A stretch of DNA of 64,000 bases from positions 11,800,699-11,864,698 of the forward strand of contig CM074519.1 of the NCBI GenBank assembly GCA_037379345.1, given 5' to 3'. The stretch comes from Perna viridis. Taxonomy: Eukaryota. The notes below the pieces were generated by a model. That model worked only from the letters and a program-made list of their open reading frames with translations. It made no database searches and was not told the DNA's origin. Below, piece after piece: positions 1 through 61,007 of this stretch. Within the stretch, counting starts at the first letter, position 1; every line of letters begins with the position of its first letter. The position numbers and the translations under genes were made by a program.

Positions 1-2376
1 CTAATTAAATTATTCAGTTGTCAATTTAAAATAGAGATACACATAGGGTACATATAGAAGATTCTCATAAACTAAGGCCAGCATAAAAGTCTTTCTCATT
101 TATTAATACTGATCAGACAAACTTAGGTGTTCTGTGAGCATGAGAAAAAAATGTACTGTTAACCAAAATAATAGTATACTGTGCTTAAAGCCCTTCAAAA
201 AACTTTGGCATTTAGGTCTATTGACATTTCCTAGGTATAATTTACTATAAACTTGTTGAAGGACACATACAAATTAATCAGTTTTCAAATAGAATTTTCT
301 TTCAAGATGAATTTATTGGTTAACAGGCTACTTAGAGAATTTGTACTGCAGTATTTATAAAAGAAACCTTAGTTAAGTGCATTGCAGCTCCTTGTGCAGT
401 GACTGACGTAAAATCTATACACCATGCTTAAAATATCCTAGATCAGAATAAACCATTTTATCGTAAAACTGTTTATTTCCAGCAGGGAGATCAGCAAGAA
501 ATTTCATTTCTAGAGAAATATTATTCTATGGGCATCATCTATAAGTAATCATTCTTTCATCAATTTGTGCAGTACAACATGGGAAAGCTATCTTCTAAGA
601 GAGATAGTCATTAATTCAAGTCTAACATTATCTTTATGGAACTACTATCAAAGATTTCATTGCACAAAGATATTTTTCTTGCCAAAAGGACCAAAAATAA
701 GTTTTTGTGATCATTATTTAAGCTCTTTCATCAGAATGGTATCCATGGTCATATAAAACCATGTTCGCAGCAAGCTCATGGTGCCATTAATTGCTGCAAC
801 AGGTGAGGCGAGAATGGAACTCTCCAGTCAAAGGAGATTAAAAACAACACACAGCAGGTGCTTGCTTGCTTCATTTCAAAATGGCAGATAAAATCAGCAA
901 CTTCTGAAGTAAAAAACTCCCTAAGTACTGACTTTTAATAACTATGAGGTACATCTTATCAAAATATATTTATCTTTAAGGAACATGGAACAATTTTTGG
1001 AGGCAGAAGTTTCCATTCCAAGTTATCACTTAGGGGTAAGCTCAGAAAAACCTTATTAGAATTAGGTGAGAAATCTTATAACATTGAAACCCTAACTCTA
1101 GACAAGACAGGTGCATTTCAATCTTAAAGATAATCAAACAACTTATTGTAGCTAATGCCATCTTCCATCTGAAGAAGCCAACACTTTTCTCTAAAGGATG
1201 TGATAAATACTAGGTGACACATGGAAACTATTCTACTTAGGCTACTCTAAAACTATTATACTTTATTTAAAATTTCTATCTACTGCTTTTACAAACCTTT
1301 AATATTCCAGAAGAGAATGAAATGATACAACTTGGCCTCAGATTTAAGACCTGAATTTAAACAATTTTCTTGATTTCAAGTTTATTTTTGGCATGTTTAA
1401 ATTTCACTATTTTGCCTTGAGCTCATGATGATGTTTTATTTCCGTATTTTGTATCGTGTCATATCATATTATATCGTGCTGTTGTTATCACTGAACTTTA
1501 ACATCCTTGATAAGCTCTTGAAATAATTAGATTTGATTTGCCGAAGCAGCTCTATAGTGCAGTTCCAAACCATGCAATTGAGTCCAATCGAAACTGTACA
1601 AGACTGCTGACGTAACTAGTCATGACACCCCATTGGAATCAATATGAGTAAACAAGTGCTTTCCATTTCCAAGCAATTATAGATGTAAAAACACAACAGA
1701 TACAAGTGTTTGAAGAAGAATGAATAAATCCCAACAAACAATAACGAGACTGCGTCACTGTAGATTTGAACACATCAACGATTGTCAATATCTTGACTAA
1801 AGTGGTTGCAATTAACACTTTTAAACATCAACCATTGTAAAGAAATTTCTTTGGCATGCGAATGCTAAAATCCATTATCCCTTTAGCAATGAAGGGAAGT
1901 GAAAACATTAAATACACTTTTGATATCCTATACATAGAAACTCCATTGAAAGAAATCTTCTGACTGAATTCCTGCCGATTAATTGATTCATAATAGAAAG
2001 GGTCTTGGTCCAACTGTTAAAAAATGGAGCCAAAAATACTCTAGCACCTACATGTAACATCTAAGAGCCAAGATACAAGACCTACTAAGGACTACTGAAG
2101 TTCTAAATGGTTGACTATGCTATAACTAAGAGATTACCAAAGACCTAAACAAAGAAGCAAACAGAGAGCTAGCCAACACCAGACAGACTAAGTAAACTAA
2201 TAAAATTCAAGTATATACATGTGTACATTTTCTACATCACTAATACATGCAATCCCATTACCATGTGTAGATAAACCCTAACTACATGTTGAGAATCACA
2301 CAGACTAAATTGTTAGAAACTTTTCAGCACAAAAATAACCTCACATCTCCACTGCTTGAGTCATTCCTACACTTAC

Positions 2377-2453
2377 ACTCAAGAATAAACATTTTGTGTA
2401 CATTTTCAAAATAACTGGTTAGTAATCGCTACCATTGGTAACTGTTAATTAAC
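2377..2453 (-). other. Candidate 77-nt poison (stop-containing) cassette exon in intron 7
   Basis: Acceptor cattgtctgcag| preceded by a 66-nt AG-free zone; donor GAGT|GTAAGT. After exon 7 it reads G|GT TAA (immediate stop). UAG-rich sequence follows directly. Confidence 0.4.
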
Positions 2454-3943
2454 CTGCAGACAATGATGCAGATGTTTTCAAAAAGCGAAACATGATCGTT
2501 TGCCAATCAGATATTCAAAAACTTTCAACCGAATAATTAACAAGTACATTTTACTATCAACAAGTGCAGAAACACACAGCTTATGGTGTCTGCGGGATGC
2601 CTCGGGTCATCCAAGGATGCCGTGATGTTTATTTGCATTTTGGCGCAACTAATAGCAATTTGGTTTTTCTTTCTGGCAGTGCAAATGAGCACGGGTGTTT
2701 AAAAGATTATTAGTACTAAGAACAGACGGCAAAATGTTCTGTTTTTCTTCATTTCAGAACCAAAGGCAGCTGTTTTGTCAGCTTAAGCTCTTCAAGAAAC
2801 GACCAACTTATCAAAGTCCATATGGAAAAAGCACATGTCAGATCGGAATTTGAGGGCTTGCCAACCAATCGAACCGTGCTATCAATCCGATGAAAACAGA
2901 AAACATTTGATATTCGACTTTTTCATTTGTTTTGCTTGTGGTTTCCCTAATAATTGTTGCTACTTCTATCGATATCAAGTGATTATCTGAGAGTATGTTT
3001 TGAAAATTTGGCTCCTAACAAATCCCCTGCCAACCTCAAGCAAAAACAGATTACTTTAGCATGGCTGTTTCAACATCTAAAAAAATCATTACTATGCTAT
3101 TCTGAAAATGAACTTAAATGCCAATTTCAGATATCAGTATAAAAAACCCCAAAGTATGCTATCATTTTCTTCTAAAATTAGAGTCATATAGTGCTTTTTT
3201 GTGAGTTTCTGGTTCTCTAAGCCAATTTGACCTATTTCAATTCATTATACATTACAAGGTCATTTTTGGCATACACACATCTTCTGTAATCAATCATATT
3301 TTAAACATTACAATCTTCAAAATCTGGAGCAGAAGGTAAAAATATTTCAATTTTCTGTTAAAACTTGTCAAAATTTAACAAGATGAAACTTAATATATAC
3401 CAAGTAAGAAATCAAGTTGACTAACCTTGAGAAAGTTAAATTCTTACAGACAATGGAAAATTTAATTCCAATAACATGATAAGTTTCAACATTTTTTTTA
3501 TGAAAACAGGTTTTGGTACATGTCAACAAGATTAAAAGAAGATAAAAATCAAAACATTTCAAAACCAGAAAAATCAAGATATTGGCATAGCTTCAGTCTA
3601 TATTTGTTTTTTCGAAAGTGACTAAGTATGCATTATATAACATTTCACGTCACACAGTATGTAAACATCAAATTTGGAGGCGAAAGTATTTTGGATAATG
3701 CAGCAGACCTTTTATGACTAACACCAAATTCAGGAGATCAAACTTTTGAAGCAAGTAGCTCCATTTTGATTGAAGAATATCACTTAAAAATTTTGAAAAT
3801 CTTTTTTGCAGAAGGCTTCTTCAAATTTCTTATAAACACTTTGTTGCAACTACAAAAAATGGAGCTGACTTGTAATATTACAAGGAATCACGGGACATTC
3901 TGAACCCCACAATTCCTTTGTTAGCTGTCGTCTGCAGCCTTAC

Positions 3944-3992
3944 CTCGATGTCTCATTGTCTGTTTATCAAACATAAGCATAGCATCTTCAAT
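3944..3992 (-). CDS. msi: Musashi exon 7 (IEDAMLMFDKQTMRHR-G), 49 nt, phase-1 end; gene continues beyond window start
   Basis: Acceptor: long T tract ending ttacag|; donor GAG|gtaagg. Matches Musashi VEDAMLMFDKTTNRHRG. I could not find the expected next exon (GFGFVTFE...) in 1-3943. Confidence 0.97.
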
Positions 3993-6900
3993 CTGTAAAA
4001 AAAAAGAAAGAAAAATATGAAATGATGCAGTTGGGAACATTATTCAGAACATTTTCACTGAAAGTACAAATATACATCTATGCAGAGCTAGAAGAATGGT
4101 GAAATACTAAACTAATGCTCAACTTCAAAATTCACTTCATTTATAATCTTTACTCTGTACTAAATAAACTGGTCTTTTCTTCTCTTAATTCCATCAAAAT
4201 TTACTGGTGCCAGTTGTACTATTCTTTTATCAAATGCAATTACACAAGTTTTCAGGTCGTCACCCTTTATCGTGAAAGACAAACAACCACACAACTGATT
4301 TGAGAACTTCCATGCAAAAAAACTTGATTGAGTACCTCTTATTGAACAATTTGCAAATATTAAATGCTAATATCTCTCATTCTTTTTCAAACAGCTGAAA
4401 CTAATTATTTCTAAAGATATCGACCCAAAAATATATTGAAATCAACTTTGAGAGATTCTAGTGGTGTATTTTGTGCCAACCCTCAACATACAACTCAATT
4501 TAGTTGAATGTATACTTTTAATTGAATTATATAACTGCAAAAATAGTGCTGGCAAATGTTTGCTCATAGTTGATTTTTCCATCACAAATTCAAGTATTTC
4601 ATTGATGGAGATGAACTCAAACTCTGGTACTTTTAGAAACTAATTATTCGACATAATAGTTAAATTATGTGTTTTAAATTACTCACATGGAAATAAATGG
4701 TTGAACCAAAAAAGAAAAGCTAAAAACTACAAGTGAACACAAAAGAACATTGTCAGGTGTTTATGTGCAAATGAACACTATAAAATAACCAAAAATGGGA
4801 CATACATGTACAATAACAACACAAACAATTTCCAGTACAATAGAGTCAGTTAAATATGAACCACTATCACTGCCTATATTTGAATACTGAGTTTTCCCAA
4901 AAAATACTTAAATTTTTTACTAATGGCACAAAAACAACATTGCAAGCCAATTTGTTTGCTTTCGCGGCGAAATAGAATTTTCAAAAACTGTTAAAGACTG
5001 TGAAACAATTGCAGAAGTCAAATGATTCTAATACACCGGTATACCAATGTGATAACCTAATTTTTATGGAAGTGAAATATACTCAACCTACACTCTTTAT
5101 TCTCTCCATATAAAATCTACTTCACCAAAAGGATCTAAGGATGAAATCCCCACTTCCCATTATTAGTTTTGTGCAAACATTTGCCTCCCCCTCAAGAAAA
5201 AATAAGTAATATACTCAAACAACCCTCCCCCCTTTTTGAAATTCCCTGGATCAGAGTGTCTCCTTTTTAAATTAATTTCAGATAACAGTCCCTGTCAACT
5301 CCGCCTATACCGTAAAAAAACTTCAGGTTATCATAACACATTATGAAAATAAAGCATTAAAGGACAGAACAACAATTCATCTATATCAACATTTCTAAAA
5401 CATAGGGTACACAAGACTTTCTCCTAATTGTGGATCAGTATTCCTCCATACATTGAACCATATATGTCTTATAAACTGAAATCCTCAGAAGTAACTAAAA
5501 AACAACAATTAAATCAATACTCTATGGAGCTGCTATTAATAACATTACTCTAGCAATAAACATGGAGTTTATTTGAATATATTTTTTCTTCCTCTAAAGG
5601 GAAAACCAATGACCTTTACTTAATGTGGGATTCATTAGGCTCTGGATCTTTTGAAATTTGATGTGATGTTGTCCACAATCAATGGAAATTTATTTAGAGA
5701 CCTCTGGTTGATTGATTTGATCTCAATCCAGTTCTAGGAAATAGAATCGAGATCAAACAACTCGGTAATTCAGTTAGGTCTAGTTTAGCTCCGTGGCGGA
5801 GACAACTGGTTGAAAGGCAATGGCTACTTCTTATTGTGATCTATATCAGTTACTTGTCTTCGACAGACATAAGATCAAAACTTCAGAAATAATTATTAAC
5901 AACAAAACCAGATGAATGGTTAATAAAACTACATTCAAATCATATACTGGTATCAGGAAATTTCAGCACAAACCTTCCTGAATTTTCAAAATCATGCAAA
6001 ATGACATGGAGGAGGACCATATATACCCTACCTAAAATAATGTATTGTGCAGAATTTCCTTTAGTTATTTGATGTCAATTCTTATATTGACACTGGATAA
6101 TTATTTCTTTTACTGATGTCATATTCAATCTTGTTACATAAAGCAATACACTAATGTATGGATTTCAAAAATACAGAAGAAAAAGGCATTTTTAGAAGAA
6201 TAGTTGCAAAATTATTAGTCCATAAATAATACAATGAATTATCATATAGGTAAATTGGTACAAAGAATTATCTTTTAGTATATTCTGTTCTTCTCATACC
6301 AAAACAACTATACAACTTTTCCCATTATTCTGAAATCACTTTAACAATGTATGCAAAATTAATTTGTTGCAAAAAGCAATTAAAATTTTTTTCATACATT
6401 GGATTTTCCAAAGCTCAATTTAAAATTGAAAGGCATGATTATCGACTTAACCTGAATGCATAATATTTATTCACAGTAGTTAACTATGCTGCCATACTGA
6501 AAAACCGATTAATTTCCTAATCACAGGGAATTATTATCTGCTATAATTATATTATGCACCTTATACTACCCCTTGAACCAAAAAGAAATCACCCTCATTA
6601 ATTGCATCAAGAAAAACTTGAGAAACAGGAAAAAGCAAGCAAGACCTCAGGAACTCATTACAAAGCCAGACATTCTACAAGGAGCATCTGATTACGGCCA
6701 CTATTAAAGGAAGTCAGCTGTAAAATTAAAAGATTTGGCGAAACAGAATCCCCACTCCCTGGCAATCATCACTAACCAAATCTAATTATATTACATTTAA
6801 TCATGGTATTTGGCAATTTTTACCTTTCTGTTTCTAAACATTTAAGAAAATACGGGGGAGGGTTTTAGCTACAGCAAACATAGAACCTGTCAAACCATAA

Positions 6901-25598: not shown

Positions 25599-26375
25599 CA
25601 TGTAAAACTTTTAGAAATTAAACCCCACTATGAGGCACTTTTACATGCTGAACAAGATCACTTCAGCCTTAGACTATGGTTCTCTACAAAATAAAGTGGT
25701 CTAGTAACTCAACATTCAGAGTTCAGATCACCAACCTATTAGTGTATACATAATAGCAAATCATCATCACCCATTAAATGAGCAATTTCAGACAAGATAC
25801 AGCATTTTAAGCTAGCTTTTTTGCTCCAATAACAACTAATCTTCATACCAAATAAAATCTATATACACCTATTCAGCAAGTATTGACCTGAATCAACTTT
25901 ATGCTTGAAGTGAGGAGAAAAGATACATATTTTAAAATTCCTCTCACTTGACATCAAAATTCTGAGACTACTAACGGTAAAATGCTTAATACTGGGTTTC
26001 AACAATCAAATCTCTTTCCCTGATGAATGTTTATTCAAATTGAGTTCACACATCATCGCATCATCATTTCATTTAAATATCGTTACAGTCAATTCGTAAA
26101 CACCGATTCACGTCAGATTGATTTTCTTTTGCACTTCCACATTGTTCAGCCGGGGATACTGTTTTTTAATGTAGGAGATTATTTGACGAGAAACCGTCGG
26201 AAGCATGTAAAAATGTTAATATTAAATAACGTTGAATTAATTCCAATGAACATTATCGTTTTATGTATTACAAGACAAGTTTTCACTAGTCTCATGCTAA
26301 TCCTGTATGAAAAGTGTCACTATATCTTCTACAGAGGGGAAACTGATTATGAATTTTTAATGTGATGTTACTAAA

Positions 26376-26783
26376 AAGAGTAATCAAGGGAACCAAGGCC
26401 ATAGCAGTAATCAAAAGAATGTAATCAAGGGACAAAGACCAGACATGGAAAACAGACATACACAACAAAGAACATAAAATAACTAAAATCATACATACAA
26501 AGTAACAAAAGTAAATGAGCAACTCGGACTCCACTAAAAACTGGGAGCATGGACCAGGTGCACCAGTAGGGTAAGCATCCTCTGCTTTTCTAGAAACACC
26601 CGCCGAGTTGCTCATAAAAAGTCAAGTCCGGGGGGGACAAACGAGGGAAGGAAAACTATGACCCATTGAATAAATCAGTTTTCATGGTGCTCATGGATAC
26701 ACCATAACGATCCACGAGTTCATGATAACGACCATAAAACTTCTGTAGTGATGACTTCAATCTTGTAGCAACATAACCCTGTT
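26376..26783 (-). mobile_element. 5'-truncated retroelement (probably Penelope-like): ORF C-terminus plus 3' non-coding region
   Basis: Minus strand 26781-26656 translates QGYVATRLKSSLQKFYGRYHELVDRYGVSMSTMKTDLFNGS*, resembling C-termini of invertebrate Penelope-like reverse transcriptases (from recall). The terminal ~220 nt recurs at 44525 and 57048. Confidence 0.75.
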
Positions 26784-44524: not shown

Positions 44525-44719
44525 CCCTACCGGTGCACCTGGTCCATGCTCCCAGTTTTTAGTGGAGTCTGAGTTGCTCATTTGCTTTTGTTACTTTGTA
44601 TGTATGATTTTAGTTACTTTATGTTCTTCATGTGTATGTCTTTTTTCCATGTCTGGTCTTTGTCCCTGGACTACATTATTTTGATTACCACTATAACCTT
44701 GGTTCCTTTGATTACTCTT
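44525..44719 (+). mobile_element. Shorter copy of the same retroelement 3' end, opposite orientation
   Basis: CCCTACCGGTGCACCTGGTCCATGCTCCCAGTTTTTAGTGGAGT...TTGATTACTCTT aligns with the reverse complement of ~26376-26571; same terminus. Confidence 0.85.
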
Positions 44720-44723
44720 CCAA

Positions 44724-44978
44724 AATTGGCCCATTTCAGGGGTGTTAGTATCAAAGTCAGTACCTACTAAGATTGGTCCATTTAAAATTCAAGGGGGTGT
44801 TTTGTAAGCGAGTAAGTGTCTACAAGAATTGGTCTATTTCAGGGGTGCTCGTGTCAAGATAACCAAGTACCCCAAAGGATTGGTCCATGTGTCAAAAATA
44901 CCAAGTTCCTCTAAAGATTGATGCATTCAACCGGGTGTTCCTGTCAAAACAAGTAAGTACCTTAAAGGACTGTTCCAT
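44724..44978. repeat. Degenerate ~45-55-bp tandem array
   Basis: Five to six decayed units of ATTGGTCCATTT...GGGGTGTT...TCAA...AAGTACC, abutting the retroelement copy. Confidence 0.65.
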
Positions 44979-57047: not shown

Positions 57048-57273
57048 AAGAGTAATCAAGGGAACCAAGATTCTAGCAGAAATCAAAAGAATGTAATCCA
57101 GGGACAATGACCAGACATTGAAAACAGACCAACACAACAAAGAACATAAAGTTACTAAAATAATTCATACAAAGTAACAAAAGTAAATGAGCAACTACGA
57201 CTCCACTAAAAACTGGGACCATGGACCAGGTGCACCGGTGGGGTTTAATTAAGCGTCCTCTGCTTTTCTAGAA
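57048..57273 (-). mobile_element. Third copy of the same retroelement 3' end
   Basis: AAGAGTAATCAAGGGAACCAAG...CTCCACTAAAAACTGGGA...TCTGCTTTTCTAGAA aligns directly with 26376-26595. Confidence 0.85.
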
Positions 57274-60653: not shown

Positions 60654-60724
60654 CCGGGATCATTTGGTATATCATCAATGCCATTTGTAGAAATTGGTGA
60701 ATTTTGAGCGGGATCCATCTTCAT
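60654..60724 (-). CDS. msi: Musashi homolog, coding exon 1 (MKMDPAQNSPISTNGIDDIPNDPG; 71 nt, phase-2 end)
   Basis: ATG at 60724-60722 with an in-frame TAG two codons upstream (second ATG at 60718). Ends DPG as in Musashi 'DPGKMFIGGL'. Donor GG|GTTAGT; splices in frame to exon 2. Confidence 0.9.
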
Positions 60725-60727
60725 TTT

Positions 60728-60758
60728 CTAAATACTACTTCTAACTAAACACTACTAC
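60728..60758 (-). promoter_or_regulatory. Cluster of Musashi-binding elements in the putative 5' UTR
   Basis: Sense RNA GUAGUAGUGUUUAGUUAGAAGUAGUAUUUAG-AAA-AUG: 6 UAG, 4 matching (G/A)U1-3AGU. Confidence 0.6.
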
Positions 60759-60775
60759 AGATATCCAAAGTAATG

Positions 60776-61007
60776 CACGTGGGGATGAAATGAAGATCGC
60801 TACACTACTATTGGTTTGAGGTGGGTGGGCCATCCGCGCGTCTCTCAAAGGCGCCAACTATCAGTGATTGACAGTCCTTTATCAGCTATCGATTGGTTAA
60901 TTGGCTGTTGCCTGGCAACACAAATCAGTTCTAGCTGACGTAATGTTAGCTTTTGACCACAAACCACGCCTTTATATACGAAATACACAATACAAACAAA
61001 CCCGCCC
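60776..61007 (-). promoter_or_regulatory. Musashi proximal promoter
   Basis: Locally CpG-richer. E-box CACGTG 60776-60781; CCAAT boxes (ATTGG on +) at 60810, 60892, 60900; PBX/PREP-MEIS decamer TGATTGACAG 60865-60874; X-box GTTGCCTGGCAAC 60907-60919; CRE-like TGACGTAA 60936-60943; GC boxes 60964-60970 and 61001-61007; TATA-like 60971-60978. TSS not determinable. Confidence 0.75.

What the first reader, a model, noticed from the sequence alone, without database searches (positions are those of the whole stretch)
2041..2521. Candidate Musashi-activated poison exon in Musashi's own intron 7
Seen (minus strand): a 66-nt AG-free zone, acceptor TGTCTGCAG, a 77-nt exon (2453-2377) and donor GAGT|GTAAGT. 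Joined to phase-1 exon 7 it reads ...MRHR-G-TAA, a stop in RNP1 of RRM2, 72 nt before the next junction. Downstream lie 19 sense-strand UAGs in 2041-2307; 14 fall in 2041-2199, against only 2 on the other strand and roughly 17 per kb in an intron stretch I counted by eye. Established: Musashi RRMs bind UAG cores, Musashi bound downstream of cassette exons promotes inclusion in vertebrate photoreceptors, and many RNA-binding proteins limit themselves through poison exons and NMD. Inference: a negative-feedback loop in which Musashi switches on decay of its own mRNA.
Basis: partly seen in the sequence, partly recalled or inferred. Interest (0 to 1): 0.8.

Follow-up and report, generated by a model that had tools for sequence, protein, structure and literature searches.

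The report
UAG cluster beside candidate Musashi poison exon
Intron 7 of a mollusc's Musashi gene really does hold an unusually dense, one-strand cluster of the UAG motif that Musashi proteins bind, just after a stop-carrying pseudo-exon, but nothing yet shows that the pseudo-exon is spliced in, so the self-limiting loop remains a good hypothesis and not a finding.

Summary
That covers the 66-nt AG-free zone, the 77-nt exon 2453-2377, the GTAAGT donor, the reading ...MRHR-G-TAA with the stop 72 nt before the exon's end, and 19 sense-strand UAGs against 3 antisense in 2041-2307.

The UAG cluster is real. It is the densest on either strand in 154 kb around the gene, exceeds all 200 block shuffles, is single-copy and is not a tandem repeat. 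No non-tandem cluster in 400 kb of random genome strand matches it.

The pseudo-exon alone is not special. The gene holds about six comparable decoys, and this acceptor is weaker than all ten true ones.

RNA contigs from four runs show no junction. They cross both candidate splice sites unspliced, but they come from pre-mRNA primed at a genomic A27 tract, so they decide nothing.

Conservation could not be tested. A 60-kb walk along a relative's contig stopped 2-3 kb short of the site. That walk did show that sense-strand UAGs are preferentially conserved in this gene's non-coding islands (50/100, against 14/59 for antisense CUA). It also found a second, conserved candidate further down intron 7: a stop-carrying exon followed by a UAG cluster.

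The parts
3944..3992 (-). Musashi exon 7 (49 nt, encodes IEDAMLMFDKQTMRHR plus the first base of a Gly codon; ends in phase 1)
   Evidence: A spliced contig of run X9 lies on 3943-3994. The same exon and intron position appear in about 45 animal Musashi loci.
2454..2521 (-). Candidate 3' splice site: a 66-nt AG-free zone (2521-2456) and the acceptor tgtctgcag (AG at 2455-2454)
   Evidence: The pyrimidine tract is the weakest of all acceptors compared: 7 U in positions -20..-3 and a longest pyrimidine run of 4, against 8-14 U and runs of 4-19 in ten true exons.
2377..2453 (-). Candidate 77-nt cassette ('poison') exon. Its use is not shown.
   Evidence: No spliced contig was found. Contigs X2 2145-2442, X2 2420-2650 and X4 2380-2530 run through both ends unspliced.
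2449..2451 (-). In-frame TAA after joining to exon 7 (…MRHR-G-stop), 72 nt before the candidate exon's 3' end
   Evidence: local translation only.
2371..2376 (-). Candidate 5' splice site, AGT|GTAAGT
   Evidence: Intron positions +1 to +6 match the consensus, while exon positions -2 and -1 do not.
2041..2307 (-). Sense-strand UAG cluster: 19 UAG in 267 nt, with a dense core of 14 UAG in 2041-2199. It lies 70-336 nt downstream of the candidate donor. Nine of the 20 UAGs in the 336 nt downstream of the donor (these 19 plus one at 2369) are UAGU and five are UAGG.
   Evidence: The region folds less stably than 95 of 100 shuffles (z = +1.46).
1124..1282 (-). Lesser sense-strand UAG cluster further down intron 7 (10 in 159 nt)
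489..647 (-). Lesser sense-strand UAG cluster (8 in 159 nt)
60702..60860 (-). Sense-strand UAG cluster (10 in 159 nt) in the 5' leader around and upstream of the start codon (ATG at 60724)

Best explanation
The window carries most of a mollusc Musashi gene on the minus strand. About 1.5 kb into its 28-kb intron 7 lies a non-repetitive, strand-specific array of 19-20 UAG triplets in weakly structured, U/G-rich RNA. I read this array as a landing pad on Musashi's own pre-mRNA for a UAG-reading tandem-RRM protein. That protein could be Musashi itself or a related hnRNP A/B-type protein. The array would be one of several such pads in this gene, with others in the 5' leader, the introns and the 3' UTR.

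The most likely output of this particular pad is control of the 77-nt stop-carrying pseudo-exon immediately upstream. Its weak acceptor would need help, and bound Musashi downstream would supply it, as it does at mouse Ttc8 exon 2A. Inclusion would truncate the protein inside RRM2 and mark the mRNA for decay.

What is shown: the anatomy, the statistical excess of UAG, and strand-specific conservation of UAG elsewhere in the gene. What is inferred: binding by Musashi, use of the exon, and decay of the product.

My odds are about 0.5 that the cluster is a functional RNA element, and about 0.2-0.25 that the full poison-exon loop operates at this exon.
For: 1. The cluster is exceptional. It has 14 UAG in 159 nt against a mean of 2.2. 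It is the top window on either strand in the 64 kb and in the 154 kb around the gene. It lies above all 200 block shuffles and above every non-tandem cluster in 400 kb of random genome strand.

2. It is neither a tandem repeat nor a repeated element.

3. The strand bias is 19 to 3.

4. True exons of the gene have 1-5 UAG in the 350 nt downstream of them. The candidate has 20.

5. The gene's 102-kb sense strand has five clusters of 10 or more UAGs, and its antisense strand has none. About 0.8 would be expected from the genome sample. My own Poisson arithmetic gives P of about 0.001.

6. I compared the gene with a relative whose introns are mostly unalignable. In the aligned non-coding DNA, sense TAG is conserved 50/100, against 39% for all 3-mers (rank 4 of 64). 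Antisense CTA is conserved 14/59 (rank 58). Fisher P = 0.0014.

7. The lesser clusters at window coordinates -21600, -26890, -34771 and -41286 have counterparts at matching positions in the relative.

8. There is a precedent. MSI1 promotes Ttc8 exon 2A inclusion through 15 UAGs in the downstream intron, and clusters of three or more UAGs are enriched downstream of Musashi-activated exons (PMC4991804).

9. A dosage-compensating feedback on mouse Msi1/Msi2 exists, and its mechanism is unknown (PMC13175383).

10. The stop lies 72 nt before the exon's end and ahead of at least six further junctions.
Against: No RNA contig joins 3944 to 2453, or 2377 to exon 8. Contigs in two runs cross both candidate sites unspliced.

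The acceptor is weaker than all ten true acceptors.

Pseudo-exons of this quality occur about once per 16 kb in this gene. One lying within 350 nt upstream of a given cluster therefore has roughly a 2-7% chance by my estimate, and the pair was picked after the fact.

Conservation of this site is unknown.

Only 6 of the 20 UAGs fit the longer (G/A)U1-3AGU Musashi consensus. Five are UAGG and one is UAGGGU, which are the hnRNP A1-type silencer motifs (PMC1079783).

The dense core lies 178-336 nt from the donor, at the far edge of the range described for Musashi-activated exons.

Dense clusters elsewhere often turn out to be trivial tandem repeats. The empirical background of 400 kb is also small for a 723-Mb genome.
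Confidence: 0.45

Rival explanations
1. Musashi protein binds the UAG array, activates inclusion of exon 2453-2377, and the premature stop sends the mRNA to NMD. This closes a negative feedback loop.
For: The anatomy is exact. The UAG array is significant. The layout matches Ttc8 exon 2A. A weak acceptor is typical of exons that need an activator. Feedback on Musashi levels is documented in mouse without a known mechanism.
Against: There is no junction evidence. The exon is one of about six equal decoys. Conservation is untested. Nuclear splicing activity of Musashi is shown only for vertebrate photoreceptors (PMC4991804). Whether NMD in molluscs follows the 50-nt junction rule is not known to me.
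Confidence: 0.22
2. The array acts as a splicing silencer or decoy suppressor. It recruits an hnRNP A/B-type repressor, or Musashi acting as a repressor, to keep cryptic splice sites silent in a 28-kb intron. These include the 77-nt pseudo-exon and the many pyrimidine-tract-plus-YAG pseudo-acceptors inside the cluster itself.
For: UAGG and UAGGGU motifs are present. UAGG is an established hnRNP A1-dependent silencer (PMC1079783). The RNA contigs show the region only unspliced. Most UAGs in the core follow short pyrimidine runs, so they resemble 3' splice sites.
Against: Only 5 of the 20 UAGs are UAGG. Silencers usually sit in or right next to the exon they silence, whereas the dense core is 178-336 nt away. 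Other decoy exons of the same gene have no such array.
Confidence: 0.15
3. The feature is neutral. The cluster is a compositional accident or the eroded remnant of an old minisatellite in a U/G-rich stretch, and the neighbouring pseudo-exon is a coincidence.
For: TA and AG dinucleotides are locally enriched, so local dinucleotide shuffles already give 9.8 UAG per 159 nt. Minisatellites rich in TAG exist in this genome and in other Musashi introns. Pseudo-exons are common. The finding was picked by eye from a very large scan. No conservation is shown for this site.
Against: There is no periodicity and no TRF signal. There is no similarity to the known minisatellite. The cluster still exceeds local dinucleotide shuffles (P = 0.0014, and <0.0002 for 267 nt). 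The same gene shows a sense-only excess of clusters and strand-specific conservation of UAG.
Confidence: 0.4
4. The idea is right but the exon is wrong. The regulated stop-carrying exon of intron 7 is the conserved island about 2.6 kb upstream of exon 8 (L004:8630-8587, minus strand), and the array at 2041-2307 serves another purpose.
For: The acceptor-like and donor-like flanks are conserved between two species whose introns are otherwise unalignable. The 44-nt (ours) or 42-nt (relative) middle is poorly conserved. Six of six UAGs are conserved within about 90 nt after the donor-like site. Both species read a stop within four codons when joined to exon 7. There are 14 UAGs in the 350 nt downstream. 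The richest 2.3-kb window for sense UAG in the 154 kb lies here.
Against: The donor-like GTATAT/GTATAC is weak (5 of 9 matches). No RNA data could be laid on it. A conserved island could equally be a DNA-level enhancer. Only two species were compared.
Confidence: 0.15

Closest known systems
Musashi-activated cassette exons of vertebrate photoreceptors (for example mouse Ttc8 exon 2A; Murphy et al. 2016, PMC4991804)
   Same: A short cassette exon is followed by clusters of UAG in the first 300 nt or so of the downstream intron. Ttc8 has about 15 UAGs within about 320 nt, and here there are 20 in 336 nt. The upstream intron has only background UAG (3 in 350 nt here).
   Different: In Ttc8, binding, Musashi dependence and loss on UAG mutation were all shown. 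Here none of them is. The Ttc8 exon is coding, whereas this one carries a stop. The host gene here is Musashi itself, in an invertebrate.
Autoregulatory poison exons and AS-NMD in RNA-binding-protein genes (reviewed in PMC6884704)
   Same: A cassette exon with a premature stop more than 50 nt before the next junction lies inside the gene of an RNA-binding protein, next to that protein's own motif.
   Different: In the known cases, inclusion is seen in RNA, rises on NMD block, and the exons are usually highly conserved. None of these is shown here. My four paper searches turned up no description of a Musashi poison exon.
Musashi1 autoregulation through its own 3' UTR in Xenopus oocytes (Arumugam et al. 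2012, as summarised in PMC6884704)
   Same: Musashi protein acts on its own transcript through UAG-type elements. This gene also has a conserved 3' UTR UAG cluster.
   Different: That loop is positive, cytoplasmic and translational (polyadenylation). The proposal here is negative, nuclear and acts through splicing.
UAGG / hnRNP A1 splicing silencers (PMC1079783)
   Same: They share the UAG core. Five UAGG and one UAGGGU lie in the array.
   Different: Those silencers act mainly from within or right beside the exon, often together with GGGG motifs. Here most motifs are UAGU and lie 70-336 nt downstream.

Membership tests
Autoregulatory poison (AS-NMD) cassette exon | The exon is actually spliced into some transcripts (junction reads at both ends) | tested here: inconclusive
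   no joints in the contigs of four runs, and contigs cross both sites unspliced. Contigs drop rare isoforms, and these ones derive from internally primed pre-mRNA. Raw reads were not available.
Autoregulatory poison (AS-NMD) cassette exon | A premature stop more than 50-55 nt upstream of a downstream exon junction | tested here: met
   TAA at 2451-2449, 72 nt before the exon's end. At least six further coding exons follow.
Autoregulatory poison (AS-NMD) cassette exon | The inclusion isoform is stabilised when NMD or translation is blocked | not testable with these tools
   This needs cycloheximide or UPF1-depletion RNA-seq.
Autoregulatory poison (AS-NMD) cassette exon | Conservation of the exon's splice sites and flanks in related species | tested here: inconclusive
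   The walk along the relative's contig ended at about window -1700, plus up to 2.4 kb that does not align. The site was not reached. More distant Musashi loci align only in exon 7.
Autoregulatory poison (AS-NMD) cassette exon | Binding motifs of the encoded protein beside the exon | tested here: met
   20 UAGs in the 336 nt downstream, significant by shuffles and by a genome sample. This is met at motif level only, since binding was not tested.
Musashi-activated cassette exon (photoreceptor type) | Clusters of three or more UAGs at short spacing in the proximal downstream intron, with no excess upstream | tested here: met
   successive spacings in the core are 19, 24, 19, 6, 5, 12, 11, 7, 3, 21, 13 and 7 nt; 3 UAGs upstream against 20 downstream. 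The criterion comes from PMC4991804.
Musashi-activated cassette exon (photoreceptor type) | Inclusion depends on Musashi and on the UAGs | not testable with these tools
   This needs a minigene with or without Musashi, and UAG-to-UAC mutants.
Tandem repeat / minisatellite | Head-to-tail repeated units or clear periodicity | tested here: not met
   TRF at minimum score 30 finds nothing in 1-4200 apart from two tiny arrays elsewhere. Autocorrelation at lags 3-80 peaks at 0.38. By contrast, L106 and L060 are clear tandem arrays.
Interspersed repeat / transposon relic | Further copies in the same genome | tested here: not met
   only the locus itself matches in the 723-Mb assembly. The tool warns that very common words are skipped.
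Recursive splice site | An acceptor directly followed by a regenerated 5' splice site (YAG|GTAAGT) | tested here: not met
   the exon starts GTTAAT, which mismatches the consensus at +3 and +5.
hnRNP A1-type UAGG silencer | UAGG or UAGGG(A/U) motifs in or next to the silenced exon | tested here: inconclusive
   five UAGG and one UAGGGU among 20 UAGs. There are none inside the 77-nt exon, and one lies at +8 from the donor.

The most novel reading that the evidence does not exclude
Musashi genes keep their own level constant by splicing. Conserved, strand-specific UAG arrays in intron 7 would let Musashi protein switch on stop-carrying cryptic exons, so that excess protein destroys its own mRNA. 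There are two candidates here: exon 2453-2377 and the conserved island L004:8630-8587. This would give a mechanism for the unexplained dosage compensation of Msi1/Msi2 seen in mouse photoreceptors, and would show that the nuclear splicing role of Musashi is old and not confined to vertebrate retina.
Probability: 0.17. Interest if true: 0.75.

Novelty: new member of a known kind. Interest (0 to 1): 0.5.

Why it matters
Musashi proteins are key regulators of stem cells, neurons and germ cells, and their dosage matters in cancer. A robust feedback on Musashi levels has just been reported in mouse with no mechanism (PMC13175383).

Self-limiting poison exons are known for many RNA-binding proteins, but my paper searches found none described for Musashi. 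A UAG-driven poison exon in Musashi's own gene would supply that mechanism. It would also show that Musashi's splicing-activator role predates vertebrates.

Even without the exon, one result stands on its own. Sense-strand UAGs are enriched and preferentially conserved across this gene's introns and UTRs. This is a concrete, testable sign of autogenous or cross-regulation.

Tried and rejected
1. Tandem repeat or eroded minisatellite. TRF, autocorrelation and comparison with a TAG-rich 29-nt minisatellite of the same genome were all negative.

2. Repeated element. The region is single-copy.

3. Known RNA family. Rfam finds nothing in window 1-6000 or at the conserved island.

4. Nested gene or independent transcript in intron 7. 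This would have explained why RNA contig depth rises towards window position 1. There is no ORF of note. The gradient is explained instead by a genomic C12-A27 tract on the sense strand at window -359 to -414, exactly where the contigs end. This means internal oligo-dT priming on pre-mRNA.

5. Recursive splice site. Not met.

6. Cross-phylum comparison. Eighty metagenome loci with Musashi exon 7 were fetched.
- About 45 are genomic and share the exon and its phase.
- Only the exon aligns to the window.
- One dense UAG cluster in their intron 7 is a 44-nt tandem repeat (L060).
- The non-tandem clusters in L021 and L023 lie in the intron after exon 9, not in intron 7. I first misplaced those two and then corrected it.

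7. Four Logan contigs found through exon-7 ORF fragments were too distant.

8. Exact look-up of ORFs overlapping the site found nothing in the collection.

No search was made with a joined (spliced) protein or cDNA model. Exons were searched one by one, by reference. The exon 7 plus candidate join was only translated locally, to check the frame.
Full report
**Where we are.** The window is G000:C9:11800699-11864698 of a 723-Mb, 46-contig assembly with about 32% G+C.

A Musashi gene lies on the minus strand. I mapped it exon by exon with a 430-aa Musashi of a related species (P0004) as a local tblastn guide.
- The start codon is at 60724.
- RRM1 exons are at about 60505, 60263 and 50103.
- The linker exon is 46833-46792.
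- Exon 6 is 28980-28888.
- Exon 7 is 3992-3944.
- Exon 8 is not in the window. It is L004:5922-5840 (C9:11776621-11776539), so intron 7 is about 28 kb.

Notes by other agents of this scan call the genome a mussel (unchecked by me). The nearest relative I found comes from hydrothermal-vent metagenomes, which would fit a vent mussel host.

**The observation.** Every sequence detail is exact:
- a 66-nt AG-free zone;
- the acceptor tgtctgcag;
- the 77-nt exon 2453-2377;
- the donor AGT|GTAAGT;
- after exon 7 in phase 1, the reading ...MRHR-G-TAA, with the stop 72 nt before the exon's end.

The UAG counts are exact too. There are 19 sense and 3 antisense in 2041-2307, and 14 and 2 in 2041-2199.

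The cluster is the densest 159-nt and 267-nt window on either strand of the 64 kb and of the 154 kb around the gene. Block dinucleotide shuffles of the 64 kb reach at most 11 and 14 in 200 trials. Local dinucleotide shuffles, which already keep the local excess of TA and AG, give P = 0.0014 and <0.0002.

The cluster is not a tandem repeat and is single-copy. In 20 random 10-kb samples of the genome (400 kb of strand), the only equal cluster is a 29-nt minisatellite. The remaining clusters reach 10 at most.

**What is not special.** GTAAGT occurs 19 times on the gene's 96-kb sense strand. Eight of these have a fair acceptor 40-250 nt upstream, and only two of the eight are true exons. The pseudo-exon is therefore one of about six.

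Its acceptor is the weakest I compared. It has 7 U and a longest pyrimidine run of 4, against 8-14 U and runs of up to 19 in ten true exons. In 32% G+C sequence, nearly any pseudo-exon carries a stop.

What stands out is the juxtaposition. True exons have 1-5 UAGs in the 350 nt downstream, and this one has 20.

**RNA.** Only assembled contigs of four putative RNA runs from four studies could be laid on window 1-6000. No joint was reported. X2 contigs 2145-2442 and 2420-2650 and X4 contig 2380-2530 run straight through the candidate donor and acceptor. X9 holds a spliced contig on exon 7 (3943-3994).

In X1, X2 and X4, depth rises two- to three-fold from about 3200 towards position 1, and the contigs end at -366, -355 and -332. 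Exactly there, the sense strand carries a genomic C12-A27 tract. These contigs are therefore internally oligo-dT-primed Musashi pre-mRNA.

This shows the gene is expressed in those samples. It says nothing about a rare, NMD-sensitive isoform.

**Conservation.** More distant Musashi loci share exon 7 and its phase-1 end but align nowhere else. This holds for 80 loci from metagenomes (about 45 of them genomic) and for four Logan contigs.

Through a C-terminal exon I found a closer relative with 83% nucleotide identity in coding sequence and mostly unalignable introns. It sits on a 186-kb contig. Walking that contig in five hops gave 59.8 kb colinear with our gene, from the 3' UTR up to window about -1700. 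The look-up cap then ended the walk 2-3 kb short of the candidate. The candidate's conservation is therefore untested.

**What the walk did show.**

(a) There are about 20 colinear conserved non-coding islands.

(b) Within them, sense TAG is conserved 50/100, against 39% for all trinucleotides (rank 4 of 64). Antisense CTA is conserved 14/59 (rank 58). Fisher P is 0.0014, or 0.007 for introns alone. TGC, part of UGCAUG, ranks first. This is strand-specific, RNA-level conservation of UAG.

(c) The gene's lesser UAG clusters have counterparts at matching positions in the relative.

- a conserved acceptor-like site;
- a poorly conserved middle of 44 nt in ours (L004:8630-8587) or 42 nt in the relative;
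- a conserved donor-like TTATCG|GTATA(T/C);
- six of six UAGs conserved within about 90 nt;
- a stop within four codons in both species when read from exon 7.

Over the whole gene, the sense strand has five clusters of 10 or more UAGs and the antisense strand has none. About 0.8 would be expected.

**Literature.** MSI1 activates Ttc8 exon 2A through 15 UAGs in the downstream intron. Clusters of three or more UAGs are enriched up to eight-fold downstream of Musashi-activated exons (PMC4991804). Xenopus Musashi1 activates its own translation through its 3' UTR (PMC6884704). Mouse photoreceptors compensate for lost Msi alleles through a feedback of unknown mechanism (PMC13175383). UAGG is an hnRNP A1-type silencer (PMC1079783). 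I found no paper describing a Musashi poison exon.

**Reading.** The UAG array is most likely a functional RNA element on Musashi's own pre-mRNA (about 0.5). A silencer role (0.15) and a neutral accident (0.4) remain open. The conserved island near exon 8 is at least as good a candidate for the same idea.

No search was made with a joined (spliced) model. Exons were searched singly, by reference, and the junction was translated only locally.

Noticed in passing
L004:8500-8650 (minus strand; C9 about 11779200-11779350, window coordinates about -21350 to -21500): A conserved island in intron 7, 2.6 kb upstream of exon 8. It has an acceptor-like site, a 44-nt middle (L004:8630-8587; 42 nt in the relative), a donor-like GTATAT/GTATAC, and then six of six UAGs conserved within about 90 nt. 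Read from exon 7, both species hit a stop within four codons. This is a second and better-conserved candidate for a UAG-controlled poison exon.
   Followed up: partly
L002:9585-9640 (minus strand; window -359 to -414): A genomic C12-A27-rich tract on the Musashi sense strand. RNA contigs of three runs end right at it, and their depth decays upstream over about 3.5 kb. This is internal oligo-dT priming on pre-mRNA, and it explains the intronic coverage of window 1-3211.
   Followed up: yes
C9 about 11765876-11766343 (intron before the C-terminal exon 11765297-11765061); relative L011:1954-2501: Two boxes that are reverse complements of each other, each containing UGCAUG. They are well conserved in the relative, while the rest of the intron is unalignable. 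They enclose about 370 nt that holds a UAG cluster (10 in 159 nt) with several conserved UAGs. It looks like a conserved long-range stem around an Rbfox/UAG-rich regulatory module.
   Followed up: partly
window 60702-60860, and C9 about 11759412 (3' UTR, window -41286): Sense-strand UAG clusters (10 in 159 nt each) lie in the 5' leader and the 3' UTR of the same gene. The 3' UTR aligns to the relative at 67% over 1.3 kb and has a matching cluster there.
   Followed up: partly
window 3954-3956 (codon in exon 7): This species reads QTMRHRG in exon 7. All 79 other Musashi sequences fetched read QTNRHRG, TTNRHRG, ATQRHRG or VTQRHRG. This is an Asn/Gln-to-Met change just before RNP1 of RRM2.
   Followed up: no
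L021:15200-15760 and L023:11180-11700: Two arthropod-like Musashi/Rbp6 loci from metagenomes carry dense, non-tandem sense-strand UAG(U) clusters (13 in 159 nt) in the intron after the ECKKAQPKE exon. In L023 the cluster follows directly after a pseudo-exon with a GTAAGT donor. UAG arrays inside Musashi genes may be widespread.
   Followed up: partly
L106:6830-8542: A 29-nt minisatellite (about 45 copies, two TAG per unit) is followed by a 48-nt repeat. This is the kind of sequence that produces trivial UAG clusters in this genome.
   Followed up: yes
window 26295-26621, 44573-44767, 57076-57267: An interspersed repeat occurs in at least three copies within the gene's introns. It shows up as similar stop-free stretches (…FHVWSLSLDYI.LIT…LVPLITL…).
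   Followed up: no
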